A stretch of DNA of 64,000 bases from contig NIVC01003154.1 in NCBI GenBank assembly GCA_002269645.1, forward strand, positions 1 through 64,000, in the 5' to 3' direction. The position numbers and the translations under genes were made by a program. The notes under the pieces are model-generated. The model was given only the letters and a program-made list of their open reading frames with translations, ran no database searches and was not told the DNA's origin. Every line of letters begins with the position of its first letter. Positions within the stretch are counted from its first letter, which is position 1. Positions 3,804 to 56,993 of the stretch are shown here, piece after piece. The stretch comes from Macrostomum lignano. Lineage: Eukaryota.

Positions 3804-4212
3804 AGCTTCATACTTGTAAGGTTCGCTCTTTGTCTGTCTGCTTCACGTGGCGACTGGCGCACAGAGAGGCTTTGGGGTTTGAGCTGAGAATGGCTGTCGA
3901 TTGTGCTCGGCATAGCCTTGCTCACGTTTTTTTTCTGCGACACGTGATTCGAGGGGTTGAGACTTGTCTATTGCGACCTTTGGATGCAGTTGTAAATTTT
4001 TTATTATGATTTTTTAACTAGAATAGCAGCACTCAGCATTGCTTGGACACTTTTTAGCCGCTAAATGTTGCAGGTTGCAGCCTCTCTATGACTCAACACA
4101 GCTCTGTGTGTGTAAAAGTTCTATTAGGTGGTCAGGCTGCAGGGTTGAGTTAATATTTCTAATTAAACTCACTTCTAGCAATTTGTTTAGTGCTTTCTTT
4201 AAGAGAAAAACA

Positions 4213-4945
4213 GTTTTCAGTCCCTATCTACAGGTGTTCAGTCTCTGTCTACAGGTGTTCAGTCTCTGTCTACAGGTGTTCAGTCCCTATCTACAGGTGT
4301 TCAGTCTCTGTCTACAGGTGTTCAGTCTCTGTCTACAGGTGTTCAGTCTCTGTCTACAGGTGTTCAGTCCCTATCTACAGGTGTTCAGTCTCTGTCTACA
4401 GGTGTTCAGTCTCTGTCTACAGGTGTTCAGTCCCTGTCTACAGGTGTTCAGTCCCTGTCTACAGTTGTTCAGTCCCTATCTACAGGTGTTCAGTCTCTGT
4501 CTACAGGTGTTCAGTCTCTGTCTACAGGTGTTCAGTCCCTATCTACAGGTGTTCAGTCTCTGTCTACAGGTGTTCAGTCTCTGTCTACAGGTGTTCAGTC
4601 CCTGTCTACAGGTGTTCAGTCCCTGTCTACAGTTGTTCAGTCTCTGTCTACAGGGGTTCAGTCCCTGTCTACAGGTGTTCAGTCCCTGTCTACAGGTGTT
4701 CAGTCCCTGTCTACTGGTGTTCAGTCCCTATCTACAGGTTTTCATTTCCTGTCTACAGGTTTTGAGTCTCTATCTACAGGTGCTAAGTCTCTATCTGCAA
4801 GTGCTAAGTCTCTATCTACAGTTGCTAAGTCTATCTACAGGTGCTGAGTCTCCATCTACAGGTGCTGAGTCTCCATCTACAGGTGCTGAGTCTCCATCTA
4901 CAGGTCCTGAGTCTACATCTACGGGTGCTGAGTCTCTTTCTACAT
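4213..4945 (+). repeat. 21-bp minisatellite (tctacaggtgttcagtctctg)
   Basis: Direct inspection. The array decays toward its right end. Confidence 0.95.
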
Positions 4946-5419
4946 TTTCTCCATTAGCTTCAATTTTCCTTTAAAATTGTTACTTATTCCTATTAGTAGG
5001 CTGATAGAAACATTGTTATTTGGCACACAGATTTTTATTGTATTAATCTGCAGATGGAATTACTTGCAGCTTACAGAAAAACCAGATTATATAATCAATA
5101 AAGGCCCGGATTTCACTTAGTTCATTCTGCATTAAGCCTAGCAAAAATTATGCTAATACGGTTCAGAATCCGCATTAGTTCGCATACCTGAGTCATCGCG
5201 CGGACATGGGCCTTGACCCGTGCCCTGCCCACTTTGTGCGACTTTGTTAAACCCCAGTAATTAATCCGGCAATGTAAAACTTTGCCTTCCATGATTTTTT
5301 CGATACAAATATGCTAATTTTTTATTGGACTGTGGGGAAGACCTTTGAAAGAAAAATTTTCTGCTAAAATTACCTGCCTATGTTTGCACGCCATCTGTAA
5401 AGGTTCCTAGTGTGGTGAA

Positions 5420-6500
5420 GGATAAGCCTGTAGACAGGGACTGAACACCTGTAGACAGGGACTGAACACTTGTAGACAGAGACTGAACACTTGTAGACAG
5501 TGACTGAACACTTGTAGACAGGGACTGAACACTTGTAGACAGAGACTGAACACTTGTAGACAGAGACTGAACACCTGTAGACAGGGACTGAACACCTGTA
5601 GACAGAGACTGAACACCGGGAGACAGAGACTGAACACCTGTAGACAGAGACTGAACGCTGGGAGACAGAGACTGAACACTTGTAGACAGTGACTGAACAC
5701 CTGTAGACAGGGACTGAACACTTGTAGACAGAGACTGAACACTTGTAGACAGTGACTGGACACTTGTAGACAGAGACTGAACACTTGTAGACAGTGACTG
5801 AACACCTGTAGACAGGGACTGAACACTTGTAGACAGAGACTGAACACCTGTAGACAGGGACTGAACACCTGTAGACAGGGACTGAACACCTGTAGACAGG
5901 GACTGAACACCTGTAGACAGAGACTGAACACCTGTAGACAGTGACTGAACACCTGTAGACAGGGACTGAACACTTGTAGACAGAGACTGAACACTTGTAG
6001 ACAGAGACTGAACACCTGTAGACAGGGACTGAACACCTGTAGACAGGGACTGAACACCTGTAGACAGGGACTGAACACCTGTAGACAGGGACTGAACACC
6101 TGTAGACAGGGACTGAACACCTGTAGACAGAGACTGAACACCTGTAGACAGAGACTGAACACCTGTAGACGGAGACTGAACACCTGTAGACAGGGACTGA
6201 ACACCTGTAGACAGAGACTGAACACCTGTAGACAGAGACTGAACACCGGGAGACAGAGACTGAACACCTGTAGACAGAGACTGACCTATAGACAGAGACT
6301 GAACACCTGTAGACAGAGACTGAACACCGGGAGACGGAGACTGAACACCTGTAGACAGAGACTGAACACCGGGAGACAGAGACTGAACACCTGTAGACAG
6401 AGACTGAACACCTGTAGACAGAGACTGAACACCGGGAGACAGAGACTGAACACCTGTAGACAGAGACTGAACGCTGGGAGACAGAGACTGAACACCTGTG
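5420..6500 (-). repeat. Same 21-bp minisatellite in inverted orientation
   Basis: The unit gactgaacacctgtagacaga is the reverse complement of the 4213-4945 unit. Confidence 0.95.
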
Positions 6501-7817
6501 CGAGACAGGGACTGAGCAGCATTAGGTAATGTTGTACACTACCTGTATCCGGGTGTCCAAGTGTAAATACATGGGACTCAATACATGTCAATAAGGTACT
6601 GAACACCAGAGATTATACATTAAATTAACGAAAAAATAAGATTTATCAGAGGTTGAACCAAATAACTTTAATGTTTTTTATTTTAGTTTGAGTTTTCTTT
6701 AACTAAAAGTTGTCAGATTTTGTTCTCAAGACACCGCTTCAGGGAGACAAACTTGAGCTGAAAGTTGCAGTCAGCCCTCTTCAACTTAAAGTTTGCAACG
6801 GTAAAGCTAGAAAATATTTTCACAAAAGTACACTGCGAGTTACAGACGGGAGTTGCCGGCGCAGTTATTGAATAAAAAACTGTCAATATTCGCTAACTGG
6901 CCCGCGCAATCGAGGTTAAATAGACGAGATTTCAAACAAAATATACAGAAGCAAGCTCACAGAGCTCTGAGCTCGCGGTGTACTGCTTGGTCCAGCAAAG
7001 GTAAAAAAAGCAATATAATGAAGCCAAGATACAAGTGTTACGAACAACAAAAAGAGAGAGAAAAATAAATGTCAATCATATTCAATTTGTTCGCGATTGA
7101 GAATAAACGATAACTAAACACTATATGCACGAAGTTGAGATCCGTCTGGATGACCTTAAAGCACACTGCTTATTGTGAGATGGAGAGAGATGACGCTAAA
7201 CATGCAGTTTATGGATTAGTTAAGTGATGACGCAAGCAACCCCCATATACTGTAGTATTTCCATCATCTTTGAGGCTGATTTGTCAGGCAATTTAATTTT
7301 TATAGAAAACGAACGAGCAGGAGGTAGGGGCTCTTTCAGCACAATGCAGGGTGCAACATTTCTCGAGCAGAAGAATAAAAATATAGCAGAGATTCGTTCG
7401 GAGCAGAGCTGTCTTCTTTAACCACTTGATTATCAACTTGGCTGAATTTTTTGCTGAATGCATCATTATAGGAGAACCTGTCTCTGAAATACCGGCATTT
7501 TCTAAATAGAAGTCAATAAGCTTGTAAAACTACATTGTACCTAACGCACATTTCTGCCCCTGAATGATCTTCGGAAGTTCACAAGGCGAGGACCTAGCCA
7601 ATTTAGCGTGTAGAAAAACATGCAAAAACATTTAGTTCGCAAAGTGCTTCAAGAACTGAAAATAATCTCCTTCGCCAATGCTTTCCGAAACTCGATTTGT
7701 TTAATGAAATTTTCAACACTCCAATCGACAATGGGATTCTATCGAGACGGTGGCGGCATCCTTTGCCACCTCGGTCACCAGGAGTTGCTGGTTAAAAATA
7801 TAGTTTAATTGCAAGAG

Positions 7818-9876
7818 TCACCGACAGCCGCAATAATCCACTTCCATGTCGTCGAACGACTTCAGTACGACCTCGTTGTGGCTGCCCTGGTACAGGATCG
7901 TCTTGGGCCGCAGCCTGGCGGGCACGCAGGTTGGCGGGCTGGCCTGGCCCGGCCGGCTGCTGTGCAGCGTCATCTGCAGGATGGCGTGGTTCGTTGCGTT
8001 GAACACGTCGCTCAGCGGGAACGGGCACTGCCCGGAGCAGGCGCCGGCATCGAAGCCCTGCGGCGCGATGATCCAACTGTCCCAGCCAATCTCGGCGAAG
8101 TCGACGTACAGCGGGCGACGCTGGCAGACCGCGGCCAGGTCTGAGGCCACGTGCGGCAGCTGCTGCCCTGAGGTGCCGCTGCTGTACCGGCGCCTCCTCC
8201 TGCCGCCGCCGCCGCCGCCGTCCCTGCGACGTCTCCTCTGGGCGGAGTGTCGAACTTCTCGACGCTGCCGACTCCGATGGTAAGTGACCAGCTGCGGCGG
8301 CTCAGCAACATCTCGCCGACGTCGAGAGTGAACCGACGTGGCCGGCGTCCAGGTGCCCTCGGCGGCCGGACTCGCGGGTCGGACGGCCAGACGGACGGCG
8401 ATTCGTCCACGATCGGCTCGGCGGCAGGATTCGAACTCGTGTCTGTCCAGCTGAATGGCGAGTTCGCTGGCTCCGGCTGGAAGCAGGCCGACACCGGCCG
8501 GCCGGTCGCAGAGGTGAGCGGACACCCGGTGAGCGAGGAGGCTGCGACCGCGTCTGTGCAGTTCGAGGCCTCTGCGATGGAGGCGGAGGTGTACAGCCGC
8601 CGGCTGCTCCGTGGCATCCAGCAGAGAAGACGCGTTGAAGTTAGCAAGATCTGGTCTAGGCGTTCCTGTTGCAAGGACGGATGGAAATTGGGATCACTTT
8701 TTTGTCTGCTTTTCGTAGTTCCAGAAAGTTGAAAAGAATTATCCAGTCAACTGACCTGCGGCGTGTGGTTGTGGACGCGAAAATGGATAACTCATGTCCA
8801 GCAACTTTTTCTCTGCGTTTATCCCGGAATCAAGATTCCAGCAGTCATCTCCACAGTGTCTCATGCGGAGGTCTGGACCCTGGCCACCCAGGCTGACCCG
8901 CCATCCACCTACCCCAGCGACCGCCAGACAGGCACTTCAAATCATAGCATAACGGCACAGTCGGAAATACTTCCAGTTTTGTGTCAGCCATTAAGACCAA
9001 ATAATAATTCAAGTTGTTATTTTTGTCTCCGAGCTCATTAAGTAGGCTTTTTACTGGTCCCAAGTTTCTTTTGTTAAAATCGAAACACTCGTCCAGATTT
9101 TGATCTGAGGCTTGGATCTTTTTTGTGTCGGGAGGCACCTGCTTCACTAATTACACTGAACTTTCCATTTCGGAGTCAGTCCACGTGTGGCAACACTCTG
9201 CTTTGAAATTCTGTTCTCATGGTAACGGATGGCAATCTGAGACCTGCGCTTATCGAGAAATCTAAATGTCAAAATAGATTCGTCAATAACTAGGTAAGAA
9301 AATTGGAGTAAATCTGACGCTAAGGACTACTTAACAACATCGTTTTGATAAAAATACATGTAGTCTTTGTCTTCTAGAGTCTTTGTATCATAAATGTTTC
9401 TAGCCAGGCCGTCATTTGACGGTTGCAAAGCTTACTTATGCCAATTTTCAAGGGCTACAGTTCCCGTACCCAGAGATCGGAATTGTTGGCGAGATGGCAA
9501 AATCTTGAGCGGCGAGGCCCACATAAACGAGCTTAATTGACCTCGCAGCTCAACCCGAGCGCTCACCAATAAGTCCGTGGCTCACAACGGAGCTCACAGC
9601 GCCGGGAATCTCCGGCACGCCATCCTCCGGCCCCAGCCAGATATCCGGTTGGTCTCGCATCAGCCGGTACATCTGGCGCATATGGTCGCTTGTTGATCGC
9701 CATGTCGATGGCGGCGACGCTGGCGACAGTGTCGGGCGGGCGGCAGCCACGGCCAGCAGTTCGGTAGCGGAGGAGTTCGGCAGCTCGGCTGAGGTAGCCA
9801 GCAGCAGCAGCGACAGAAGCTGCAGCAGCAGCAGCGGCTGTGGCAGCTGCGGCAGCGATACGCGAGTTCGCTGCAT
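7818..9876 (-). CDS. BMP/GDF-type TGF-beta family ligand, about 385 aa, 2 coding exons
   Basis: Exon 9876-9567 holds the signal peptide and ends ATT G|gtgagc. Exon 8665-7818 starts after ccttgcaacag|GA, phase 1. The prodomain has an FNASSLLD...HLRLHR motif and polybasic furin sites. The mature domain CQRRPLYVDFAEIGWDSWIIAPQG...CSGQCPFPL...NATNHAILQ...TCVP...VVLKSFDDMEVDYCGCR matches the BMP2/4/GDF consensus. The orthologue cannot be assigned by eye. Confidence 0.93.
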
Positions 9877-11929
9877 CTGCGGGGTCCGGTTATAAATTCT
9901 CGGTAGACAAAGTTTCTCTCTAAGCCACTTGCTTGTTTGTGCGTCTGTCTGTCTGCCTTCCTGTCTGCCTGTCTGTCTGGCTTCTCTTGTACGCCTTTAT
10001 TAGCGAGTCTGTCTGTCGACTCGAGATAATGCTTTAATTCTCGACCAAAAAAGCACAAGACTACCGCTGGTCTCCAACCAAAACGTAAGGCGGGCTCCGA
10101 ACTGGCGCCGGGGCTTTAATTTTTTTGGCGACGACGAGATGGCTGGGGCTGCGAGGGGGAGGCCGCCCTTCCTATGGCGTGACGGCCCCAGGTGGGGGCA
10201 CGCAGAAGGGAGAGAAGGGACCGACTTTTGGCACTTGGCCATTGGCTTGAAGCTTTGCGGGAACGGAGTGGGTGGGGCAAGAGGGGAGAAAGAAGCGAAT
10301 GCCGATTTCGGCTGCCCACGCTCCTTCGCCTCCCCCTCTCTATCACTCTGAGACATTCTTGCATTACAATGCAATAATGGCCTCCCTGACAGCTCGGAAT
10401 GGCTCACTTATGGTTCAGGCGAGCGGTCACTTCTGACGGCAAAACTTTCCAACGTTATGTCTCTAATTGTTCTAGACGTGACACGTTTACTCAATATTCG
10501 AAGCCTCCAAAAACCTCCTGACTCGCTTCATCACTTTTCGCTTAAGGGTGTATCCGACGATGTCGCGCCCAATTCTGTTTGGCTCGACCCCTCATTGAAC
10601 AGAGCCCGCCCGCGGCCTCTCTAAGTGGCCAATGCAGGCTACAATGGTTCGCTGGCCTGAAAGTTATATTGCAGCTGAACAAACGCACTGCACTGGTTTA
10701 CCGACCCCAACGCCTGCAACATCTCTGCAGACGTCTCTGGTCTTTGTTGACTTTTTCTCTGCCATATATCTCTGGAATATATAGATACCACAATGTTGTA
10801 ACAGCTTGCGTATAGAACTATAACTTCAGGAAACAAATTCTACACTTGATAGCAAGCTTAAGTTTTACAGCTTTACATATGTTGAGGCTAATTTTAACTG
10901 CAAGATAACATTGTCTTATTTATGCTAGGTATTTGACGGCTTGTAATTATAAGAGTCATTTATCGGTCTTCGCGAGTTGTCTTCGACAATCTTTTCGATG
11001 AAGGTTTTGGGATTCGTTAAGCAATTGGCTGTTGCATTCAAAAAGGTGCATAGGGAGGTACAGCTGAAACATGTAGCCATGGAGAGGGTATCACAGACAG
11101 GGCTAATGGCCAATTGTGATGGCAAAATGCCAATCTGCTGTCAGGTGAAGAATTGCAACTGTGTGACAAAACAAACACAAATTATCAGTGAATAAGCCAG
11201 CCTGCCAGACTGTCGCTATTCCTCCATTTTCAACAAGTTAAATGCGGTTAGACGAACGACAAAAAGGTAGAGCGTGCGGTTGTCTCCCTGCATGGTAATT
11301 CATTTCTTTAGTGCAGTCGTCTCTTTGGGATACTGGCGGGCGTATAGGGATTTTTTATTAACGGTCGGAAGTTTTACTGCGAACAGAATTGTCTCTTAAT
11401 TGATAATAACGTTGCCAACGAGCAACAAATCGAGAGCCTGTTGTTCAAAGTTGTCTTTCATAAATGGATTTGTGACAGCCCCCCATCGGCCCCCCTACTT
11501 GACTTCGCAACTGGCTCGTGTAAATCATGGCAAGCTGTGCTGACACAAAATCCTGAATTTAACGTTTAGAACTTTTAGTCCTCTCTGCACTACTCATTTT
11601 AGCAGTAGTATGTTCGAAATTTGGATAACCAAACAGGGCGATAGTGATCACGGTATGATCAAGTCTGGTTGCCAATTACCCGAGCCTGCCAAGCAGTGCG
11701 CTTGCACTCCTCGCATTATTCTGGGCTGCTAGCTAGCTCGTACTTATTGAATCAATTGAATGTCGTAGCATTGTCTTGTTATATTTAATTATATGCCTTG
11801 TGAGAAGACAAGAAAGACGTTATTCTATATTTTAAACTATCGTAGCTCGTATATTAATAAGATCTTTCGGTTTTCAATGAGTCACATGAGGCCTTTTGGC
11901 TTTCTGTTTGCGAGGCAATAACACCGTGC

Positions 11930-12295
11930 TGGGGGGGCCGTAGCCCAGCGCAGCGGTCTAGCGCAGGCTCTGGTGTGCCAGCGACCCAGGCTCGATTCCA
12001 AGTGCAGTCACATTAATTTGGGGCTGAATTGGAATCTCGGCTTGGCTCTGCTCGTGAAATTAACGGCCTTGAGAGCCAACCCCCCCAAGGCGCAGTGAAG
12101 TGTACATGCCTAACGATAAAATAAAGTTAGGGCCGCTGTACACTCCTGTGTGAGTGTGTGCCTGCGTACATATCCGCGCACTTGTGTGCCTGCTCAGGGG
12201 AGTCGGCGGAATGGGCAGTAATGCCTCTCGTCGGTTGTGTGCCTATGTCGCTTAAAGTGCGCCAGGGCACACAACCCCCCTGCCTCTAATAAAAA
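11930..12295 (+). mobile_element. tRNA-derived SINE-like element with a 10-bp TSD
   Basis: It has an A-box-like TAGCCCAGCGCAGCGG, a B-box-like GGCTCGATTCC and an A-rich tail. The direct repeat AACACCGTGC lies at 11920-11929 and 12296-12305. Confidence 0.75.
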
Positions 12296-14914
12296 AACAC
12301 CGTGCATTGATTTTTGGACCCTCGCGGGCGTGAATCCAACGTTTTAAGTTAATTTTCCCGAACACTGAATCGAATCCAGTGTTGAATCTAGTGTCCATCA
12401 AGAGTATTTGCCATTCACCTCCATCTGGTTGATCGTCTTAAGATAAGAACATTCAGATATAGGAGGTAGACAATATTTGAATATTGAGAATTACTGATGA
12501 GAAAATGCGCGAGAGAAAAAGGGGAATCGTTGACTGAGGATCCTAATTATTTTGGGATTTTTGTCAGTATCTGATGACGATTCTTATACTCGTAGTCCGT
12601 AGTTCAATAATATTTATTTGCGACAAAAACAACTTTTCAAAATGCGTAACTTACCAAACTGTTGCCTAACGTGAAGAGTAGCATGTGACCAACAAATATT
12701 TTTGTAGAGGCAAGGATTAGCCGATCGTCGGTCCTGGTTACCAAGGTGGAGTTTTTATACACACTCTTGGGCACCGCCCACACTGCTGTCCTGATGGATT
12801 TCTCTTGACTTGACAGGCAATGAGCGGATGAGGGATTAGCTTGATCAATCTATGAGAAAAGCAAAGCGATCAAGGCTGAGGGGTGCTGGTGGCGTAGAAG
12901 CAGTTTAATCTCAGTAGAGCCAAGAGTGACGCTTAGCCGAGCGGTTCTTTCCAAATATGTCGCGCTCCTTTGGTCAAGAGATCCTCGCCCATGCAGAGGA
13001 GTGGCCACTTATATGCCCTCGCAGCCGGACAAGAAGTCACGGCGAGAAATAGTAACAGCGCCAAGTGGCGGGCGGTCGACACCTTTGCGGTTGCCGAGGC
13101 TGGGCGAGGCGGAGGAGGCCGGGAGGATGCGCAGAAAAAAGCAAAATAATCAACCGATGCTCTACACCAAAGCCAGCGCCTCCGACAGATAGAGGAACAA
13201 AAAAATTAGTTTAAAGAAGAAGGCAGGACGCGCCCAATTATCCCGGATGGGGAGGCGGCTCTGGAGAGCGAGAGAGGAAGGGGAAAACCAAGGGGAGCTG
13301 AGGAATTTAGGTAGGAACCGCTGGAATAACGGCAGGAGGGGTCGGGAGACGAGCTGCATTGGCTGTGGGGTCCGAGCCGTGGTGGGATGGGGTTTGGAAT
13401 CGAAGATCAAGGGCATCGATGCATCAACTGGGACGCCACAAGCGGCGCGTCTTGGCGAGGTCCCCATCGCAAATATCCCACTCTCCCATACAGGCGATCG
13501 TTTTCAGCCGAGCAGAAAGCGAAAGAGTGAGAGTGAGAGAGAGAAAGAGAGAGAGAGAAAGCAAATGTTAGCACAAGTCGTGTAAGTGGCAAGGGGGCGT
13601 GCACTGGAGTGTTTCGCCTTGTTAACACACGTTTTTTCGTATCATCTCTCCCTTCGCTCACTTCATCCTTTTCCTTTCCATAACCGTCTCTTTCAACTTA
13701 CTTTGGCTTAGGGTGCTGGCAGAATCAGGAAAAACTTTCACCGCGCATTCTATAGGCGATAGTTTTCTCTTCTGTCCAGCACAAAGGAAATGACCGGAGC
13801 CCTTGTTGATTGCAGGCGGGAGAGCCCGCGGCGGACCGTGACTGGAATCGGGGGCCGTTTTTCTGCCCAACTGCCCCCCTCTCCTCCTCCTCGCGGCATT
13901 TCTTGGGGCAACCCGCCAGACAGACTGACGGCAGGTTTGCGCAGCGCGAGCGAACCGGAGAAGGGAAACGCAGCAGAGAGGCTAAGATGAGAGAAAATTC
14001 GAGACTTGTTCGGGGCACGGGACTGGCCTGATGCGTGCGGCCCAGATGCAACCGGCCAGCATGATCCGCGGACTGATAACGGAGCCAATTATTTTTCTGG
14101 GCACAACATTGAAGCAGGCGCCTGCAGTAAAAGGCAAACAGTTTGCTTTGCAGTTTACGTCAGCTAATTTTTCACTTTTGGTATAAATCACAGAGTGCTA
14201 GTTGAGAGCAGCTCCGTTCGTACAAGCTGTAGGATTGTTAAAATTTGCACGTCCAAAATTTCTACATTCCAAAACAGTTTTCAGTCTCAACAAAGTCAAA
14301 ATTTGAAGGATAAACTGGCCGGTACTTTTTGACTGCAAACTTTGATCAACTTTGGTTGGATTTTTGTCGTAAAATCCGACACCAGCAGAGCATTGTAAAA
14401 CACGGGCAGACAGAAAATTAAACCTAACACATCTTTCCAGGAGAGTGTAGGAAGCGACGGGTAGCCGCGCAGAATGTCGGGCAAAGAACTGCCGACAAGT
14501 TTTTCCCTGATTTCTTCTTGCATTTTAATTTAGAACACGAGCTATCATATTGTTATGGTCGCACAACCGGTTCAAGTCTGCAAGACCCTTACTTGGCCTT
14601 CATTTTCCGCCCGATGGGGGTGCAACACCTTTATTAAATGGTTTCCTCTCATTTTCCTAGTCGAGAACATCCAACTAGCGAAACAATCGAGGCAAATACA
14701 GACACTTTGCTGCTCTTTGAAAATGCGGTAACTTTAGCCTAATGGCGATCAGTGATAATCTAAGTCACTGATCTAATCTACCAAAGTACGCGCCCTTTTG
14801 CTGCGGCTGCTAGATGCCACTCATGCCAAGAAACAAAACAGAAGCTCGACGAATGATAGGGGCTCCACTTCAGCCACCTCTTGGCATCTACACATGCACA
14901 TACAAACCTACCAA

Positions 14915-15480
14915 GAGGGGCGTCCACCGAGAGACAGTGGCATCCAAAAAGAGACAGTGGTGTTCACCAAGAGACAGTGGCGTCAACCAAGAGACAGTGG
15001 CGTCCACAGAGATAGTGGCGTCCACCAAGAAACAGTGGTGTCCACGAAGAGACAGTGGCGTCTACGAAGAGACAGTGACGTCAACCAAGAGACAGTGGCG
15101 TCAACCAAGAGACAGTGGCGTCAACCAAGAGACAGTTGCGTCCACAAAGAGACAGTGGCGTCAACCAAGAGACAGTGGCGTCCACAAAGAGACAGTGGCG
15201 TCCACAAAGAGACAGTGGCGTCAACCAAGAGACAGTTGCGTCCACAAAGAGACAAGTGCGTCAACCAACTGACATTTGCGTCTACCAAGAGACGGGTGAC
15301 GTCCACCAAGAGACAGTGGCGTCAACCATGAGACAGTAGCGTCCACAAAGAGACAGTGGCGTTCACCAAAAGACCACTGGGGTTCACCAAGAGACAGTGA
15401 CGTCAACCAAGAGACAGTGGCGTCAACCAAGAGACAGTGACGTCAACCAAGAGACAGTCTTGCGTCCACCAAAGAGACAG
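14915..15480. repeat. 21-bp minisatellite (agagacagtggcgtcaaccaa)
   Basis: Direct inspection. Confidence 0.92.
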
Positions 15481-16650
15481 TTAATTGGTGCCCACCCAGA
15501 CATCAAGGCGCTCTTAAAGGAATGCGTCTCCTAAATAATAAATTCTATCGTACAAGACTGGTGCCAATAAAAGTACACGCATCTTTTTCCCTTAAATTGG
15601 TATTCAAGCAAGCAGATCTAAATGTTAGTTGATTGAACTATTGTATGAACTAGTACATGCAGTAGTTAGTATTTTTAGCATAAAAACGTACACTTAACAC
15701 TTGTATATGATGCTGCACAAAAATCTGCATATTTTAATGTTTATATTGCTCACAATATCGACTTTGACATGTATGTATGTGCTATAAAAATGTATGCATG
15801 TGATAGCTTGTTTAGTTATAAAAAGTAAATGATTCTTATTCCATGCATTCTTATTTAAATGGATTAGGTTTTGTCTTTTGTTCTGAATGCGACAGAAACT
15901 AACATACATAGGAAATTCCACATATTGCCCATCATGCATTATAATTCAGTTTTTCTACTGGTAGTAGCGAGAGAAGCGTATTGCGGAATGGAGAAATACA
16001 TGTAATACATGACTTATAGTGAGGATCATGTCGAATATGTTGCTCTTTGAATCTGCAATTACGCCGCTAGATTGCGCAAACATGCATAAAATAAATAAAA
16101 GCATTGCAACCGGGAATCTAGACGTGATCCTATTTTGTTTACTTCATGCTTAGACAGTGGGGCACAACTCTTGGGAAGTGTGGAAAGACTCGACATTTTC
16201 ATGTATTTTAGAAAAAATCTAACGGCCGAATTTCCAGTTAAAACACGCGAAATTCTAAAATTAAACAAAAAACAAAAAGTTGCAGAATTTTTTAATGAAA
16301 AGAGTTTATATTAGAATATTTTTCAAAATAAAATTAAGCGAGAATTCTTGTTTTATACAGAAAATTACTTTTAAAGTATGGTTGTACTCAAATGTAGCTT
16401 GTTTTTAAAAAAAAAGCCTTAGCTAGAGTTGAATTTGCACTTTGCAGGTTCGTGTCGTGTTTTTTACATTTTCCATGACAAGATTGTATTTTTACGAGAG
16501 TGACGCTACTTACTCTTGTCCTATCTCCTGACGCAGACGGTGGCGATTAAGTGATAACTTTATCAATCGGTACACACTACTTGACTTCAGTTTTTGTGAA
16601 ATTTTTTACATCAGAGGAACTCAATTTATATTTTGTGAGTATAAAGCACA

Positions 16651-22600: not shown

Positions 22601-25600
22601 TTTCAGTAATTTATCAATATTGTTTGTCCTTGATTTATGATTTTTTGTTTCACTACCAAAATAAATAGTCATAACTATTAGTACAGCATTTAAAATACTA
22701 TAAATTTTATACATCAGTGTGAAAAGGTATTTATCTCCAAGAACTGGTTTCCAGTGTTTGGTTTTGATCATGATTTTATATTTTAAACCCTACCCTTACT
22801 CACTGCTTGAACAGAGCTCTACAAAGACGGCAATAACTACTGGGAGGCATACAACTATAAAGCATCACTTGATGTCAGCCACACCTCAGTGAAAGACAAT
22901 GTCGAACGAATCGATTCACGAAAAATCTCGTTGGAACAATTTCGAGAACGATTTGAACGACCATATAAGCCTGTGGTTATCACTCACGATACAGACAATT
23001 GGCAGGTAGGAATTCATGCTTATTTGGCTTGTGTTATGCTGATGAGTGAGTCATTGCGTGGTCAATGATCAACCAGTGTGACTAGGAATAGAGTATGATT
23101 GACTGCAATGACTGGGGGAGGTAATCAATGACCAACTGAAATGACTGAGGGGAATCAATGACTAACAGAAATGACTGAGGGGAATCAATGACCAACAAAA
23201 ATGACTGGAAAGTGGAATCAATGACCAACAGAAATGACTGAGGGGAGTCAATGACCAACAGAAATGACTGAGGGGAATCAATGACCAACAAGAATGACTG
23301 GAAAGTGGAATCAATGACCAACAGAAATGACTGAGGGGAGTCAATGACCAACAGAAATGACTGAGGGGAATCAATGACCAACTGCAATGACTAGGCGAGA
23401 GAAATCAATGGCCGACTGCAATGACTAGGCGAGGGGAATCAATGGCCGACTGCAATGACTAGGCGAGGGGAATCAATGGCCGACTGCAATGACTAGGCGA
23501 GGGGAATCAATGACCAACTGCAATGACAGAGAGGGGGAATCAATGACCGACTGCAATGACTGGGCGAGGGGAATCAATGGCCGACTGCAATGACTAGGCG
23601 AGGGGAATCAATGGCCGACTGCAATGAATAGGCGAGGGGAATCAATGGCCGACTGCAATGACTAGGCGAGGGGAATCAATGGCCGACTGCAATGACTAGG
23701 CGAGGGGAATCAATGACCGACTGCAATGACTAGGCGAGGGGAATCAATGGCCGACTGCAATGACTAGGCGAGGGGAATCAATGACCGACTGCAATGACTA
23801 GGCGAGGGGAATCAATGACCGACTGCAATGACTAGGCGAGGGGAATCAATGACCTACTACAATGACAGAGAGGGGGAATCATTGACCAACTGCAATGACT
23901 AGGCGAGGGGAATCAATGACCGACTGCAATGACTAGGCGAGGGGAATCAATGACCTACTACAATGACAGAGAGGGGGAATCATTGACCAACTGCAATGAC
24001 TAGGCGAGGGGAGTCAATGACCGACTGCAATGACTAGGCGAGGGGAATCAATGACCGACTGCAATGACTAGGCGAGGGGAATCAATGACCGACTGCAATG
24101 ACTAGGCGAGGGGAATCAATGACCTACTACAATGACAGAGAGGGGGAATCATTGACCAACTGCAATGACTAGGCGAGGGGAGTCAATGGCCGACTGCAAT
24201 GACTAGGCGAGAGGAATCAATGACAGAGAGGGGGAATCAATGGCCGACTGCAATGACTAGAGAGGGGAATCAATGACCAACTACAATGACAGAGAGGGGG
24301 AATCAATGACCGACTGCAATGACTGGGCGAGGGGAATCAATGACCAACTGCAATGACAGAGAGGGGGAATCAATGACCGACTGCAATGACTAGGCGAGGG
24401 GAATCAATGACCAACTGCAATGACTAGGCGAGGGGAATCAATGACCAACTACAATGACAGAGAGGGGAATCAATGACCAACTGCAATGACTAGGCGAGGG
24501 GAATCAATGACCAACTACAATGACAGAGAGGGGGAATCAATGGCCGACTGCAATGACTAGGCGAGGGGAATCAATGACCAACTACAATGACAGAGAGGGG
24601 GAATCAATGACCGACTGCAATGACTAGGCGAGGGGAATCAATGACCGACTGCAATGACTGGGAGAGGGGAATCAATGACCAACTACAATGACAGAGAGGG
24701 GGAATCAATGACCGACTGCAATGACTGGGAGAGGGGAATCAATGACCAACTGCAATGACTGGGAGAGAGGAATCAATGACCGACTGCAATGACTGGGAGA
24801 GAGGAATCAATGACAAACTGCAGTGACAAGGGATAGATGAATAGCTTATCGTGAGAAGTTTATATAATTATAAGAGACTAAAAATAAAACCCCATCACTG
24901 TCTCAGGCCTGCCGCAAGTGGACGGTGCCCAGGCTGAACAAAAAGTATCGAAATCAGCGCTTCAAATGCGGCGAAGACGACGACGGCTATTCGGTGCGCA
25001 TCAAGATGAAGTACTTCACGCAGTACATGCGCGCGAATAGCGACGACAGTCCGCTGTACATCTTTGACGGAAATTTTGGCGAGCATAGGAAGAAGCGCAA
25101 GTTGCTGGAGGATTACCGGGTACGGACCTGAGCGTGCTTGAATTGCACCTAAGTTATGCAGCCATCATCATGAGATAATCACTCCAATTAGCCATCATCA
25201 TGAGATAATCACTCCAATTAGCCATCATCATGAGATAATCACTCCAATTAGCCATCATCATGAGATAATCACTCCAATTAGCCATCATCATGAGATAATC
25301 ACTCCAATTAGCCATCATCATGAGATAATCACTCCAATTAGCCATCATCATGAGATAATCACTCCAATCATCAGATAATTACTCCAATTAGCCAGCATTA
25401 TCAGATAATCACTCCAATTAGCCAGCATTATCAGATAATCACTCCAATTAGCGAGCATTATCAGATAATCACCCCAATTAGCCATCATCATAAGATAATC
25501 ACTCCAATCATCAGATAATCACTCCAATCATCAGATAATCACTCCAATTAGCCAGCATTATCAGATAACCACTCCAATTAGCCAGCATTATCAGATAATC

Positions 25601-27314
25601 ACTCCAATTAGCCAGCATTATCAGATAAACACCTCAATTAGCCAGCATTATCAGATAATCACCCCAATTAGCCAGCATTATCAGATAATCACCCCAATTA
25701 GCCAGCATTATCAGATAATCACCCCAATTAGCCAGAATCATCAGATAATCACTTCAACTAGCCATCATCATCAGATAATCACTGCAATTAGCCATCATCA
25801 TCAGATAATCACCCCAATTAGCCATCATCATCAGATAATCACCCCAATTAGCCATCATCATCAGATAATCACTCCAGTTAGCCATCATCATCAGATAATC
25901 ACTCCAGTTAGCCATCATCATCAGATAATCACTCCAGTTAGCCATCATCATCAGATAATCACTCCAGTTAGCCACCATCATGAGATAATCACTCCAGTTA
26001 GCCACCATCATGAGATAATCACTCCAGTTAGCCACCATCATCAGATAATCACTCCAGTTAGCCATCATCATCAGATAATCACTCCAGTTAGCCATCATCA
26101 TCAGATAATCACCCCAATTAGCCATCATCATCAGATAATCACTCCAGTTAGCCACCATCATGAGATAATCACTCCAGTTAGCCACCATCATGAGATAATC
26201 ACTCCAGTTAGCCACCATCATGAGATAATCACTCCAATTAGCCATCATCATGAGATAATCACTCCAGTTAGCCACCATCATGAGATAATCACTCCAGTTA
26301 GCCACCATCATGAGATAATCACTCCAATTAGCCATCATCATGAGATAATCACTCCAGTTAGCCACCATCATGAGATAATCACTCCAGTTAGCCACCATCA
26401 TGAGATAATCACTCCAATTAGCCATCATCATGAGATAATCACTCCAGTTAGCCACCATCATCAGATAATCACTCTAATTAGCCATCATCAGATAATCACT
26501 CCAGTTAGCCACCATCATGAGATAATCACTGCAATCAGCCATCAGTAGACAATGACTCACCCCAACACCGCCGCAGGTGAGCCACCTGTTCCCCGAGGAC
26601 CTGTTCAGCCTGGCAGGCGAGCGGCGCCGGCCGCCATACCGCTGGTTCGTGATGGGCCCGGCCCGCAGCGGCACAGGCATTCACATCGATCCGCTGGGCA
26701 CGAGTGCGTGGAACGCGCTGGTCCGCGGGCACAAGCGCTGGTGCCTGTTCCCAATTGATGCGCCCAAGGATTTGGTCAAGCCAGCCGGCATCGAAGCCTC
26801 CAAACAGAAGGGCGAAGCAGCCGCCTGGTTCAGCTGCGTCTATCCTCGGACTCAACAGGCCGACTGGCCGGAGCGTTGGCGCCCACTGGAGATTCTTCAA
26901 AGACCCGGGGAGACAGTGTTCGTGCCCGGCGGCTGGTGGCATGTTGTGCTCAATCTTGACGACACGGTGGCCGTGACTCAGAACTTCTGCTCAAGCGTCA
27001 ACTTTCCAACCGTCTGGCACAAGACTAAACGTGGCCGGCCTAAAATGGCCAGAAAAGTGCTGGCCGAGTTGAAGCGGACGAGGCCTGACCTGGCCGCTGT
27101 CGCTGAGTCTATCGATACGAGTCGGCCTAGTGGATTTCACAGTTCATCCAGCAGCTCGTCTAGCAGCTCTTCTAGTAGCAGCAGCAGCAGCAGCGGCTCC
27201 GGAGACGATTCCGCGAGCTCAGACTCCGAGTCTGGCGATAGCGGAGTTGAGAGGACTAAAAAGCGGCGGCGTGAGTCTGAGCAGCAGGCATCCGCTACTA
27301 ATGGAGTTCACTGA
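16651..27314 (+). CDS. JMJD6: JmjC-domain protein JMJD6 (arginine demethylase/lysyl hydroxylase, PSR), about 399 aa, 4 exons
   Basis: Exons are 16651-16708 ([19 protein letters not shown]), 22815-23005 (DNVERID...FERPYKPVV), 24907-25119 ([18 protein letters not shown]...DSPLYIFD) and 26577-27314 ([30 protein letters not shown]...[16 protein letters not shown]...poly-Ser). All introns are GT-AG and in phase. The motifs match JMJD6 along its whole length. Confidence 0.96.
18666..19187 (+). repeat. AT-rich dispersed repeat, copy 1 (copy 2 at 57451-57970)
   Basis: It aligns colinearly over about 520 bp with 57451-57970 (e.g. gtaatgtatctaaaaaa, aaactattgttttcatgcttta, ttaagttgttttctttcatttaaatat). 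Confidence 0.8.
19370..19935. repeat. About 20-bp minisatellite (aaaaggattaggtaagtcgc) in JMJD6 intron 1
   Basis: Direct inspection. Confidence 0.92.
20088..20830. mobile_element. hAT MITE-family left end followed by CT-rich and GA-rich low-complexity tracts
   Basis: The stretch caggggtcggcaaa...cgcgaagcccctctatctggccctc matches the 40009 left end. The right TIR was not found. Confidence 0.55.
23060..24830. repeat. About 34-bp minisatellite (gaatcaatgaccgactgcaatgactaggcgaggg) filling JMJD6 intron 2
   Basis: Direct inspection. Confidence 0.95.
25150..26545. repeat. 30-bp minisatellite (ttagccatcatcatgagataatcactccaa) filling JMJD6 intron 3
   Basis: Direct inspection. Confidence 0.95.
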
Positions 27315-27559
27315 CTGTTGAGCAGAATGATTGATTAATGAATGAAAGTAGAAGAGTACAGTGCGTGGTTTTTTTATTTATATACTCGTATTTTTTCCTC
27401 CGTAACAACTGACTCCTGACCTGACGGGACGGGACGGGAGAGAGTTAAGCGCCGATTAACTTTAATGAATTTAGAGCCGTACGCAGGCTTATATAAATCC
27501 GCCCCCCCCCCGTAGTAATTTAGGATTCTTCAAAATTCAGTTAAAGAAGAGCCCCAATA

Positions 27560-29830
27560 ACCCTCTCCAATCCGCCCCAATAAGCCTCTCAAATCCGCCC
27601 TCTAGAACCATCTCAAATCCGCCCTCTAGAACCATCTCAAATCCGCCCTCTAGAACCATCTCAAATCCGCCCTCTAGAACCATCTCAAATCCGCCCTCTA
27701 GAACCATCTCAAATCCGCCCTCTACAACCCTCTCTAATGCGCCCTCTACAACCCTCTCTAATGCGCCCTCTAAAACCCTCTCTAATGCGCCCTCTAAAAC
27801 CCTCTCTAATGCGCCCTCTAAAACCCTCTCTAATGCGCCCTCTAAAACCCTCTCTAATGCGCCCTCTAAAACCCTCTCTAATGCGCCCTCTAAAACCCTC
27901 TCTAATGCGCCCTCTAAAACCCTCTCTAATGCGCCCTCTAAAACCCTCTCAAATGCGCCCTCTAAAACCCTCTCTAATGCGCCCTCTAAAACCCTCTCTA
28001 ATGCGCCCTCTAAAACCCTCTCTAATGCGCCCTCTAAAACCCTCTCAAATCCGCCCTCTAAAACCCTCTCTAATGCGCCCTCTAAAACCCTCTCTAATGC
28101 GCCCTCTAGAACCCTCTCAAATCCGCCCTCTAGAACCATCTCAAATCCGCCCTCTAGAACCCTCTCAAATTCGCCCTCTAGAACCCTCTCAAATCCGCCC
28201 TCTAAAACCATCTCAAATCCGCCCTCTAGAACCATCTCAAATCCGCCCTCTAGAACCATCTCAAATCCGCCCTCTAGAACCATCTCAAATCCGCCCTCTA
28301 GAACCATCTCAAATCCGCCCTCTAGAACCCTCTCAAATCCGCCCGAAAAACCATCTCAAATCCGCCCTCTAGAACCATCTCAAATCCGCCCTCTAGAACC
28401 ATCTCAAATCCACCCTCTAGAACCATCTCAAATCCGCCCTCTAGAACCATCTCAAATCCGCCCTCTAGAACCATCTCAAATCCGCCCTCTAGAACCATCT
28501 CAAATCCGCCCTCTAGAACCATCTCAAATCCGCCCTCTAGAACCATCTCAAATCCGCCCTCTAGAACCATCTCAAATCCGCCCTCTAGAACCATCTCAAA
28601 TCCGCCCTCTAGAACCATCTCAAATCCGCCCTCTAGAACCCTCTCAAATCCGCCCTCTAGAACCATCTCAAATCCGCCCTCTAGAACCATCTCAAACCCG
28701 CCCTCTAGAACCATCTCAAATCCGCCCTCAAGAACCATCTCAAATCCGCCCTCTAGAACCATCTCAAATCCGCCCTCTAGAACCATCTCAAATCCGCCCT
28801 CTAGAACCATCCCAAATCCGCCCTCTAGAACCCTCTCAAATCCGCCCGAAAGACCATCTCAAATCCGCCCTCTAGAACCATCTCAAATCCGCCCTCTAGA
28901 ACCATCTCAAACCCGCCCTCTAGAACCATCTCAAATCCGCCCTCTAGAACCATCTCAAATCCGCCCTCTAGAACCATCTTAAATCCGCCCTCTAGAACCA
29001 TCTCAAATCCGCCCTCTAGAACCATCTCAAATCCGCCCTCTAGAACCCTCTCAAATCCGCCCGAAAGACCATCTCAAATCCGCCCTCTAGAACCATCTCA
29101 AATCCGCCCTCTAGAACCATCTCAAATCCGCCCTCTAGAACCCTCTCAAATCCGCCCTCTAGAACCATCTCAAATCCGCCCTCTAGAACCATCTCAAATC
29201 CGCCCTCTAGAACCATCTCAAATCCGCCCTCTAGAACCATCTCAAATCCGCCCTCTAGAACCATCTCAAATCCGCCCTCTAGAACCATCTCAAATCCGCC
29301 CTCTAGAACCCTCTCAAATCCGCCCGAAAGACCATCTCAAATCCGCCCTCTAAAACCCTCTCTAATGCGCCCTCTAAAACCCTCTCAAATCCGCCCTCTA
29401 AAACCCTCTCTAATGCGCCCTCTAAAACCCTCTCAAATCCGCCCTCTAAAACCCTCTCAAATCCGCCCTCTAAAACCCTCTCAAATCCGCCCTCTAAAAC
29501 CCTCTCAAATCCGCCCTCTAAAACCCTCTCTAATGCGCCCTCTAAAACCCTCTCAAATCCGCCCTCTAAAACCCTCTCAAATCCGCCCTCTAAAACCCTC
29601 TCAAATCCGCCCTCTAAAACCCTCTCTAATGCGCCCTCTAAAACCCTCTCAAATCCGCCCTCTAAAACCCTCTCAAATCCGCCCTCTAAAACCCTCTCTA
29701 ATGCGCCCTCTAAAACCCTCTCAAATCCGCCCTCTAAAACCCTCTCAAATCCGCCCTCTAGAACCCTCTCAAATCCGCCCTCTAGAACCATCTCAAATCC
29801 GCCCTCAAGAACCCTCTGAAATCCGCCCCA
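27560..29830. repeat. 24-bp minisatellite (aatccgccctctagaaccatctca), two variant blocks
   Basis: Direct inspection. Confidence 0.95.

Positions 29831-48131: not shown

Positions 48132-56993
<8,862 letters not shown>

What the first reader, a model, noticed from the sequence alone, without database searches (positions are those of the whole stretch)
7818..8126. BMP/GDF ligand lacking the inter-chain disulfide cysteine
Seen: the mature domain has only six Cys. The canonical CCVP is TCVP, with an ACC Thr codon at 7929-7931. Established: the first Cys of this CC pair forms the covalent dimer bond, and it is missing in vertebrate GDF3, GDF9, BMP15 and Lefty. These act as non-covalent dimers, heterodimer partners or antagonists. 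Inference: this is an independently derived invertebrate non-covalent BMP that may modulate dorsoventral patterning, regeneration or germline signalling.
Basis: partly seen in the sequence, partly recalled or inferred. Interest (0 to 1): 0.7.

Follow-up and report, generated by a model that had tools for sequence, protein, structure and literature searches.

The report
Flatworm BMP ligand without dimer cysteine
A gene of the flatworm Macrostomum lignano encodes a BMP-type growth factor that has lost the one cysteine that normally links its two subunits covalently; the loss is real and arose independently, but similar losses are already known in vertebrates, nematodes and a hemichordate.

Summary
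Window 7818-8126 (minus strand) runs from the first knot cysteine to the stop codon of a TGF-beta/BMP mature domain. It has six Cys, and ACC (Thr) at 7929-7931 sits where BMP2 has Cys78, the inter-chain cysteine.

The window is 100% identical to Macrostomum lignano contig NIVC01003154.1, gene Mlig030963.g2. Two further genomic copies carry the same ACC. ACC is two substitutions away from any Cys codon, so a base-call error is very unlikely.

The mature domain looks functional. Its dN/dS between the g2 and g3 copies is about 0.07, and the AlphaFold model (pLDDT 91) superposes on BMP2/GDF5 at about 1 Å. The prodomain evolves almost neutrally and has no Pfam propeptide match.

The protein is a divergent orphan. 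It is clearly not ADMP, Nodal or GDF9/BMP15, scores below true BMP2/4, and has only a weak Univin/Vg1/GDF1 affinity. The loss is therefore independent of the vertebrate cases.

It is not unique. C. elegans TIG-2 and TIG-3 are published cases, and Saccoglossus BMP10 and NodalC and several nematode BMP-like proteins also lack this Cys.

Non-covalent dimerisation and the proposed roles are inference only. Verdict: a new member of a known rare kind, of modest interest.

The parts
12655..12684 (-). Annotated 5' exon (ATG MLLFTLGNSL) with a GTAAGT splice donor. It is the first exon of the database gene model Mlig030963.g2.
   Evidence: sequence and donor; gene span L002 5001-9867, which equals window 12684-7818; P0019 sequence.
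9567..9876 (-). Coding exon that starts at an acceptor ...ccgcag|ATG (MQRTRVS...). It holds the signal peptide and the first part of the prodomain, and ends ...HGLIG|GTGAGC.
   Evidence: tblastn: 100% identity to P0019 residues 11-114.
9787..9876 (-). Putative signal peptide MQRTRVSLPQLPQPLLLLQLLSLLLLATSA.
   Evidence: Read from the translation: a hydrophobic L-rich core followed by A-T-S-A. No signal-peptide predictor was run.
8666..9566 (-). Intron of 901 nt (GT...AG), 97.0% identical to the intron of the homeologous copy g3.
7818..8665 (-). Last coding exon: the rest of the prodomain, the cleavage sites, the mature domain and the stop codon.
8184..8276 (-). Cluster of three multibasic (furin-type RXXR) motifs: RSRQRR, QRRRRRD and GRRRRRY. 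The last two are separated by a Gly run (G6 here, G5 in g3).
   Evidence: coordinates; 3-nt GGC indel between the copies. Cleavage itself is inferred.
7821..8126 (-). Cystine-knot (mature BMP-type) domain of 102 residues, from Cys1 to the C-terminal CGCR.
   Evidence: Pfam PF00019; PDB sequence hits to BMP2/GDF5/BMP6 at E about 1e-32; AlphaFold pLDDT 90.9; Foldseek hits to BMP2/GDF5 with TM 0.88-0.96 and rmsd about 1 Å.
7929..7931 (-). ACC Thr codon at the position of the inter-chain disulfide cysteine (BMP2 Cys78).
7992..8000 (-). N-A-T sequon aligned with the conserved BMP2 Asn56 N-glycosylation site.
   Evidence: Glycosylation is inferred.
8424..8510 (-). The two prodomain cysteines (codons 8508-8510 and 8424-8426), both upstream of all cleavage motifs and conserved in g3.

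Best explanation
[quoted passage not shown] It is a three-exon gene for a secreted pre-pro-protein of the TGF-beta superfamily.

Shown: a hydrophobic signal sequence, a prodomain of about 250 residues, three multibasic motifs and a 102-residue BMP-type cystine-knot domain. All six knot cysteines are present. The seventh cysteine, which in BMP2 (Cys78) makes the only covalent bond between the two subunits, is threonine.

Inferred: after furin-type cleavage the mature peptide folds into the normal BMP monomer, with three intrachain disulfides (by homology C284-C350, C313-C382 and C317-C384). It then associates through the usual hydrophobic helix-to-finger interface into a dimer that is not disulfide-linked. 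This could be a homodimer or a heterodimer with another BMP-type ligand, as in GDF9/BMP15 and as modelled for C. elegans TIG-2.

Most BMP2 receptor-contact residues are kept: W28, W31, A34, F49-P50-L51, D53, the N56 sequon, L90, L100 and K101. The most likely activity is therefore an agonist or co-ligand acting on BMP type I and type II receptors. Its dimer would be more exchangeable and less stable than a covalent one.

Evolutionarily it is a fast-evolving orphan with at most a weak Univin/Vg1/GDF1 affinity. The cysteine was lost independently of the vertebrate and nematode cases, and before the duplication that produced copies g2 and g3.
For: Identity of the locus: the window is 100% identical over 12 kb to L002/NIVC01003154.1, and its protein equals P0019, PAA52980.1.

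Domain and fold: Pfam; PDB sequence hits; AlphaFold pLDDT 90.9; Foldseek TM 0.88-0.96 and rmsd about 1 Å to BMP2/GDF5.

Thr in place of Cys. The same codon is present in three loci.

Selection between g2 and g3: the mature domain has 1 nonsynonymous and 4 synonymous changes (dN 0.004, dS 0.060; P = 0.011 against neutrality), while the intron differs by about 3%.

Gene structure: canonical GT..AG splice sites and an in-frame model.

Receptor-epitope residues were read from the alignment with BMP2. Their role comes from my own knowledge of BMP2 mutagenesis.

Independence of the loss: family-HMM scores are GDF9/BMP15 76, Nodal 102, ADMP 109, BMP2/4 125, a nematode BMP-like group 130 and Univin/Vg1 140 bits.

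Precedent for stable non-covalent dimers: GDF9/BMP15 and TIG-2/TIG-3 (PMC11210861).
Against: No expression, protein or phenotype data were examined. No orthologue outside M. lignano was found, and the next best hit among representatives of about 15 billion proteins scores 147 bits against 855. Conservation can therefore be judged only between recent duplicates.

The prodomain evolves about neutrally (10 nonsynonymous and 5 synonymous changes) and has no PF00688 match even at E<=10. The full-length AlphaFold model was uninformative (pLDDT 40).

One of the three copies (L003) carries a 1-bp deletion.

Several residues near the dimer and wrist surface are changed relative to BMP2: F41G, Y42A, L66T and H39D.

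Dimerisation itself was not modelled or measured.
Confidence: 0.65

Rival explanations
1. The ligand does not form a productive homodimer. It acts as a free monomer or an obligate heterodimer partner that dampens or redirects signalling. A monomer could bind type II receptors but could not assemble the two-subunit type I 'wrist' site. This would resemble Lefty, GDF3 as a BMP inhibitor, or engineered monomeric TGF-beta.
For: The dimer cysteine is missing. Residues next to the second knot Cys and in the helix that packs against the partner subunit are less hydrophobic than in BMP2 (F41G, Y42A, L66T). The weak Univin/Vg1/GDF1 affinity recalls ligands that, from my own knowledge, act mainly as heterodimer partners of Nodal. 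An engineered TGF-beta2 monomer is in the PDB (5ty4, listed); that it acts as an inhibitor is from my own knowledge.
Against: Natural ligands without this Cys (GDF9, BMP15, and TIG-2 by modelling) still dimerise. The family placement is weak and dominated by long branches. No candidate partner from M. lignano was examined.
Confidence: 0.2
2. The gene is a decaying or functionless duplicate in a recently polyploidised, repeat-rich genome, and the Cys loss is part of its degeneration.
For: The prodomain evolves near neutrality and has no recognisable propeptide domain. Copy L003 has a frameshifting 1-bp deletion and is annotated only as a 51-aa fragment. The branch is long and no orthologues were found.
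Against: The reading frame is complete in two copies. All six knot cysteines and the W-x-x-W, FPL, NHA and CGCR hallmarks are kept. The mature domain is under purifying selection between the copies (1 nonsynonymous vs 4 synonymous changes, P = 0.011). The fold is predicted with confidence. The deletion in L003 lies in a CCC run and may be an assembly error.
Confidence: 0.1
3. The Thr is a sequencing or assembly artefact and the real codon is Cys.
For: Only assembled sequence, not reads, was available to me.
Against: The same ACC, inside an identical 24-mer, is present in three independently assembled loci. These include the about 95%-identical homeologue, whose very next variable codon differs (R vs K). 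ACC needs two base changes to become TGY.
Confidence: 0.01
4. It is the M. lignano ADMP (or BMP2/4) orthologue, or belongs to an already described six-Cys clade.
For: A 2015 phylogeny placed one M. lignano transcript (RNA1310_15976.1) in the ADMP subtree (PMC4600745). I could not obtain that sequence to compare.
Against: The score against an ADMP profile is 108.6 bits, against 179-206 for true ADMPs left out of the profile. For BMP2/4 it is 125, against 184-218. ADMP hallmarks (GWSGWIISP, RPTNHATVQS, CCVPDKL) are absent. The score against GDF9/BMP15 is 76 bits. No flatworm six-Cys clade turned up in the literature or in the searches.
Confidence: 0.04

Closest known systems
Vertebrate GDF9 / BMP15 (and GDF3)
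   Same: BMP/GDF-type mature domain with the six knot cysteines but not the inter-chain one (Ser in GDF9/BMP15, Val in GDF3). They form non-covalent homo- and heterodimers.
   Different: No specific relationship: 76 bits against a GDF9/BMP15 profile, compared with 140 for the best family. The replacing residue is Thr. The C-terminus is CGCR, not CTCR. GDF3 is, from my own knowledge, a mammalian offshoot of Vg1/GDF1, so its loss is separate.
C. elegans TIG-2 (BMP-like) and TIG-3
   Same: Invertebrate ligands published as members of a 'rare subset' lacking the dimerisation cysteine. A homodimer (TIG-2) and a heterodimer are supported by AlphaFold-Multimer (PMC11210861).
   Different: Lys replaces the Cys there, Thr here. 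The phylum is different, and no orthology was shown. I did not have the TIG-2 sequence to place in the tree.
Univin / Vg1 (DVR-1) / GDF1 family
   Same: Best-scoring family profile (139.8 bits). The most similar single sequences are protostome 'DVR-1-like' or 'univin-like' proteins and fish or bird Vg1/Derriere (55-58% identity in the knot domain). The NHAILQ motif is shared.
   Different: True members score 181-187 bits when left out of the profile. Bootstrap support is under 50%, and the sister taxa are other long branches. Apart from GDF3, the Univin/Vg1/GDF1 members in the alignment have the seventh Cys.
BMP2/4/Dpp and GDF5-7 (structural templates)
   Same: Best matches among solved structures (E about 1e-32; TM 0.88-0.96, rmsd about 1 Å). 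Most wrist and knuckle residues are shared.
   Different: About 47-53% identity. It scores 125 bits on the BMP2/4 profile, against 184-218 for true members. It lacks Cys78.
Saccoglossus kowalevskii BMP10 and NodalC; unnamed nematode BMP-like proteins (Bursaphelenchus, Caenorhabditis auriculariae, Heterodera, Mesorhabditis)
   Same: Invertebrate 7-Cys-type ligands in which the first Cys of the CC pair is replaced: by Ser in most, and by Arg in Mesorhabditis.
   Different: They belong to different subfamilies and phyla. To my knowledge none has been discussed for this feature. A relative from Diploscapter keeps CC, which shows the residue is lost repeatedly.

Membership tests
TGF-beta superfamily | Match to the TGF_beta domain profile (PF00019) above the curated cut-off | tested here: met
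   103.3 bits against a cut-off of 27, E=1.4e-29, profile positions 2-104 of 104.
TGF-beta superfamily | Six cystine-knot cysteines with canonical spacing (C...CxGxC...C...CxC) | tested here: met
   C284, C313, C317, C350, C382 and C384 align with BMP2 C14, C43, C47, C79, C111 and C113.
TGF-beta superfamily | Cystine-knot growth-factor fold (two finger pairs plus a wrist helix) | tested here: met
   AlphaFold pLDDT 90.9. Foldseek top hits are BMP2, GDF5 and BMP6, with TM 0.82-0.96 and rmsd about 1 Å.
TGF-beta superfamily | Pre-pro architecture: signal peptide, prodomain and a multibasic cleavage site before the mature domain | tested here: met
   A hydrophobic N-terminus and three RXXR clusters 20-50 residues before Cys1, read from the translation. 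Processing itself was not tested.
TGF-beta superfamily | Recognisable TGF-beta propeptide domain (PF00688) | tested here: not met
   No hit even at E<=10 for either copy. Most of the other full-length homologues carry PF00688. The full-length model has pLDDT 40.
BMP/GDF (7-Cys) branch, as opposed to the TGF-beta/activin (9-Cys) branch | No extra N-terminal Cys pair; best similarity to BMP/GDF members | tested here: met
   There is a single Cys before the LYVDF motif. PDB hits rank BMP2/GDF5/BMP6 (1e-32) well ahead of activin (3e-18) and TGF-beta (1e-14).
BMP/GDF (7-Cys) branch | Seventh cysteine (BMP2 Cys78) forming the inter-chain disulfide | tested here: not met
   Thr (ACC, 7929-7931) at this column in all three loci.
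Ligands that dimerise without a disulfide (GDF9, BMP15, GDF3, Lefty, TIG-2/3) | Absence of the dimerisation cysteine and of any spare Cys in the mature peptide | tested here: met
   Six Cys, all knot positions, and none between the cleavage motifs and Cys1.
Ligands that dimerise without a disulfide | Dimer demonstrated to be non-covalent | not testable with these tools
   This needs non-reducing gels, size-exclusion chromatography or multimer modelling. The structure tool predicts single chains only.
ADMP | Scores with the ADMP profile as true members do; ADMP signature motifs present | tested here: not met
   108.6 bits, against 179-206 for left-out ADMPs. The motifs GWSGWIISP, RPTNHATVQS and CCVPDKL are absent.
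BMP2/4/Dpp | Scores with the BMP2/4 profile as true members do; groups with them in trees | tested here: not met
   122-125 bits, against 184-218 for left-out members. It never groups with BMP2/4 in bootstraps.
Univin / Vg1 / GDF1 / GDF3 | Scores with the family profile as true members do; supported grouping in trees | tested here: inconclusive
   It is the best family (129-140 bits, margin 4-10 bits), but true members score 181-187. The sister group is Univin/Vg1-like in 47% of bootstraps and consists mostly of other long branches.
GDF9 / BMP15 | Profile score and grouping with GDF9/BMP15 | tested here: not met
   76.3 bits, the lowest of all families tested.

The most novel reading that the evidence does not exclude
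Macrostomum carries a lineage-specific Univin/Vg1-derived ligand that has become a purely non-covalent, exchangeable subunit. It would act as a natural heterodimer partner or monomeric damper that tunes BMP/ADMP signalling in an animal with whole-body regeneration. Its loss of the dimer cysteine, together with a degenerate prodomain, would mark a different mode of ligand assembly from canonical BMPs.
Probability: 0.12. Interest if true: 0.55.

Novelty: new member of a known kind. Interest (0 to 1): 0.33.

Why it matters
TGF-beta ligands without the inter-chain disulfide are few. Where they have been studied (GDF9/BMP15 cumulin, GDF3, Lefty, TIG-2/TIG-3), they have unusual biology: subunit exchange, heterodimer-only activity or antagonism.

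An independent case in M. lignano would be experimentally accessible, because that flatworm has RNAi, in situ methods and transgenesis (my own knowledge). It could show what losing the covalent link does to a BMP-type signal in regeneration or the germline.

It also adds to the evidence gathered here that this cysteine has been lost repeatedly across animals: in vertebrates, nematodes, a hemichordate and a flatworm.

The gene is uncharacterised in the databases and was not found in the literature searched. What is new is the case, not the principle.

Tried and rejected
1. ADMP identity. This was suggested by a published tree that contains one M. lignano transcript. I rejected it on profile scores and missing signature motifs. 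The transcript itself could not be retrieved.

2. Search for close orthologues.
- The word-indexed search with the 235-aa ORF found only the g3 copy above 53% identity.
- The profile search listed only consensus-like BMPs.
- The exhaustive representative search showed a gap from 855 to 147 bits. It merges relatives above 50% identity into one cluster, so it cannot reveal close orthologues.
- A third word-indexed search with the mature domain alone returned nothing. That search was wasted.

3. Tandem duplicates in the window. tblastn found only this one TGF-beta locus.

4. Full-length structure, to see whether the prodomain keeps the LAP-like fold. The model had pLDDT 40 and was uninformative.

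5. Origin of the similar protein P0211. It comes from an unnamed ENA metagenome assembly, so there is no taxon.

6. Literature searches for Macrostomum BMP/ADMP, for a flatworm six-Cys ligand and for 'Mlig030963'. Nothing specific was found.

7. Whether flatworms have Nodal, which bears on a Vg1-type partner role. The papers read gave no clear statement.

8. The nematode Ser-for-Cys proteins look DBL-1-like to me, but I did not verify that name.
Full report
**What is at the coordinates.** The feature lies on the minus strand. The ORF 7818..8525(-) ends ...PPTCVPARLRPKTILYQGSHNEVVLKSFDDMEVDYCGCR*. It matches Pfam TGF_beta (PF00019) at E=1.4e-29 over the whole profile. The + strand has ggt at 7929-7931, which is ACC (Thr) on the coding strand. 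The mature domain has six Cys codons, at 8124-26, 8037-39, 8025-27, 7926-28, 7830-32 and 7824-26. In phmmer alignments to BMP2 chains the Thr lies opposite the first C of 'CCVP', which is BMP2 Cys78, the inter-chain cysteine (residue numbering and role from my own knowledge).

**Where it comes from, and whether the codon is real.** Window 4001-16000 is 100% identical to contig NIVC01003154.1 of the Macrostomum lignano assembly GCA_002269645.1 (L002). The encoded protein equals PAA52980.1, 'hypothetical protein BOX15_Mlig030963g2' (P0019).

The assembly holds two more copies:
- L003 (NIVC01001075.1) is 99.87% identical over 10 kb. It has a 1-bp deletion in a CCC run of the prodomain and is therefore annotated only as a 51-aa fragment.
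- L001 (NIVC01000420.1, gene g3) is about 95% identical in DNA, introns included, and 97% identical in protein.

All three contain the same 24-mer with ACC. In g3 the codon three positions downstream of the Thr differs (TCVPAK vs TCVPAR), so the copies are independent witnesses. ACC is two substitutions away from TGY. A base-call artefact is therefore very unlikely. Raw reads and cDNA were not available.

**Gene anatomy.**
- The coding sequence from ATG (MQRTRVS...) runs 9876-9567.
- A 901-nt GT..AG intron follows, at 9566-8666.
- The last exon runs 8665-7818.
- The database model adds ten residues (MLLFTLGNSL) from an exon at about 12655-12684. That exon has a GTAAGT donor and joins an acceptor ...ccgcag|ATG.

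The protein has, in order:
- an L-rich hydrophobic N-terminus (putative signal peptide, 9876-9787);
- a prodomain with two Cys;
- three multibasic motifs (RSRQRR, QRRRRR|D and GRRRRR|Y; 8276-8184), with a Gly run between the last two;
- about 20 residues, and then the 102-residue knot domain.

No Cys lies between the cleavage motifs and Cys1. The mature peptide therefore has an even number of Cys, all of them knot positions, and no spare thiol for a covalent dimer.

**Is it a working gene?** I compared g2 with g3 by the Nei-Gojobori method.
- The mature domain has 1 nonsynonymous and 4 synonymous differences (dN 0.004, dS 0.060). The probability of one or fewer nonsynonymous changes out of 5 under neutrality is 0.011.
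- The prodomain has 10 nonsynonymous and 5 synonymous differences (dN/dS about 0.8), which is not distinguishable from neutral (P = 0.42).
- The intron differs by about 3%.

An AlphaFold model of the mature domain, built with 58 aligned sequences, has mean pLDDT 90.9. It superposes on BMP2, GDF5 and BMP6 crystal structures with TM 0.82-0.96 and rmsd about 1 Å.

In the alignment with BMP2 most residues known from mutagenesis to contact receptors are kept (their role is from my own knowledge): W28, W31, A34, F49-P50-L51, D53, the N56 sequon (N-A-T here), L90, L100 and K101. The changes include H39D, F41G, Y42A, H54V, L66T and S88T.

Against this, the prodomain has no PF00688 match even at E<=10, although most of the other full-length homologues have one. 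A full-length model was uninformative (pLDDT 40). On balance the mature domain looks functional and constrained, and the prodomain looks loose.

**Which BMP is it?** The reference sequences came from a published alignment of 162 ligands (PMC4564238, S1 Data). I transcribed them, and human BMP2 matched the PDB sequence. I added database hits whose source names I looked up.

Identity in the 102-residue core peaks at 58% (P0141). It is 55% for P0144, P0153 and P0156. P0153 is Priapulus 'DVR-1-like', and several other top matches are fish or bird Vg1/Derriere or Limulus 'univin-like' proteins.

Neighbour-joining trees with bootstraps put the flatworm protein on a long branch beside Limulus univin-like and next to the Univin/Vg1/GDF1 group, with at most 38% support. 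Its sister in resampled trees is usually another long branch: Limulus 29%, P0211 16%, P0176 16%.

Profiles built for each family score the query as follows:

| Family profile | Bits |
|---|---|
| Univin/Vg1 | 139.8 |
| Nematode BMP-like group | 130.3 |
| BMP2/4 | 125.0 |
| GDF5-7 | 122.8 |
| BMP9/10 | 118.8 |
| BMP5-8 | 114.9 |
| ADMP2 | 111.7 |
| ADMP | 108.6 |
| Nodal | 102.3 |
| BMP3 | 99.9 |
| GDF9/BMP15 | 76.3 |

Invertebrate members left out of their own family profile score 152-218 bits, with margins of about 10-58 bits over the runner-up.

The protein is therefore a divergent orphan of the BMP/GDF branch. It is clearly not ADMP, Nodal or GDF9/BMP15. It scores well below true BMP2/4 and GDF5-7 members, and leans at most weakly toward Univin/Vg1/GDF1.

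A 2015 study placed one M. lignano transcript in the ADMP subtree. By these scores and the missing ADMP motifs, that is probably a different gene, but I could not retrieve that sequence.

**Is the loss independent, and is it unusual?** It is independent of the vertebrate cases. GDF9/BMP15 are the most distant family tested, and GDF3 is, from my own knowledge, a mammalian derivative within Vg1/GDF1.

I found no flatworm six-Cys clade. Fasciola BMP1 and BMP2 are reported with seven Cys (PMC4354977). No paper in the library mentions this gene. No closer relative exists in the searchable protein collections, with the caveat that the representative library hides relatives above 50% identity.

The loss is not unique among invertebrates:
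- C. elegans TIG-2 (BMP-like) and TIG-3 were described in 2024 as members of a 'rare subset' lacking the dimerisation cysteine. Lys replaces it, and AlphaFold-Multimer supports dimers (PMC11210861).
- In the published alignment, Saccoglossus BMP10 reads RVSCVPT and NodalC reads PSCVPV.
- Among my hits, unnamed BMP-like proteins of Bursaphelenchus, Caenorhabditis auriculariae and Heterodera have Ser, Mesorhabditis has Arg, and two unnamed sequences (one from ENA, one from Logan) have Gly and Ser.
- A Diploscapter relative keeps CC.

The residue has evidently been lost many times.

**How it most likely works.**
- Shown: the domain architecture, the intact knot, the missing inter-chain Cys, the absence of a spare Cys, purifying selection on the mature domain and the retained BMP fold.
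- Inferred: furin-type processing; folding with three intrachain disulfides; association into a dimer held only by the hydrophobic interface, as in GDF9/BMP15; binding to BMP type I and type II receptors.
- Consequence: such a dimer should be able to exchange subunits and may be less stable. This would favour heterodimer formation or a modulatory role.
- The main rival is that it cannot homodimerise productively and acts as a monomeric or heterodimer-only damper. The less hydrophobic residues at BMP2 positions 41, 42 and 66 give this some colour, but no test was possible.
- A decaying duplicate is less likely, given the constraint on the mature domain.

**Verdict.** This is a new, independently derived member of a known rare kind: TGF-beta ligands without the dimerisation cysteine. 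It lies in an uncharacterised, fast-evolving flatworm gene. It is of modest interest, because the principle and invertebrate precedents are already published. Its value lies in the experimental tractability of M. lignano.

Noticed in passing
window 4216-4944 and 5427-6499: Two arrays of the same 21-bp minisatellite in opposite orientation (about 35 and 51 copies; TTCAGTCTCTGTCTACAGGTG and its reverse complement) lie just 3' of the gene. The long 'ORFs' there (FSLCLQV... repeats) are artefacts of the repeat.
   Followed up: partly
L003 about 5599 (copy of window about 8370, prodomain): The near-identical third copy (99.87% over 10 kb) has a 1-bp deletion in a CCC run that breaks the frame, so the database holds only a 51-aa fragment (P0018). 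This is either a real pseudogenised copy or a homopolymer assembly error.
   Followed up: partly
window 8666-9876 and 8127-8665 (prodomain): The prodomain has no Pfam TGFb_propeptide match even at E<=10. It evolves about neutrally between the homeologues (10 nonsynonymous vs 5 synonymous changes), unlike the constrained mature domain.
   Followed up: yes
window 8205-8222: A GGC-repeat length difference (six vs five Gly) between copies g2 and g3 lies between the last two multibasic cleavage motifs.
   Followed up: no
window 27559-29828; 46187-48015; 50173-51299; 25160-26544; 23101-24828: The window is packed with long minisatellite and microsatellite arrays, for example a 24-bp unit x 95 copies with GC skew -0.66, a 23-bp unit x 81 copies, and AGAC x 281 copies. 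In all, 48 tandem-repeat rows score 200 or more.
   Followed up: no
window 26577-27314(+), 34019-35086(+), 42635-43462(+), 56253-56993(-): ORF fragments of other genes match Pfam families: a JmjC hydroxylase domain, a nucleoporin FG-repeat region, part of a protein kinase domain and an RH1 (RILP homology) domain. Their exon structures were not worked out.
   Followed up: partly
proteins P0197, P0232, P0276 (Ser), P0138 (Arg), P0262 (Cys-Cys): Within one group of nematode BMP-like proteins the inter-chain Cys is replaced in Bursaphelenchus, Caenorhabditis auriculariae and Heterodera but kept in Diploscapter. A separate Mesorhabditis BMP5-8-like protein has Arg. These proteins are unnamed in the databases.
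   Followed up: partly
published alignment PMC4564238 S1 Data: Saccoglossus BMP10 (RVSCVPT) and NodalC (PSCVPV) lack the inter-chain Cys. Zebrafish Squint and Xenopus Xnr2 and Xnr5 have a Cys shifted two residues upstream (C-x-S-C).
   Followed up: no
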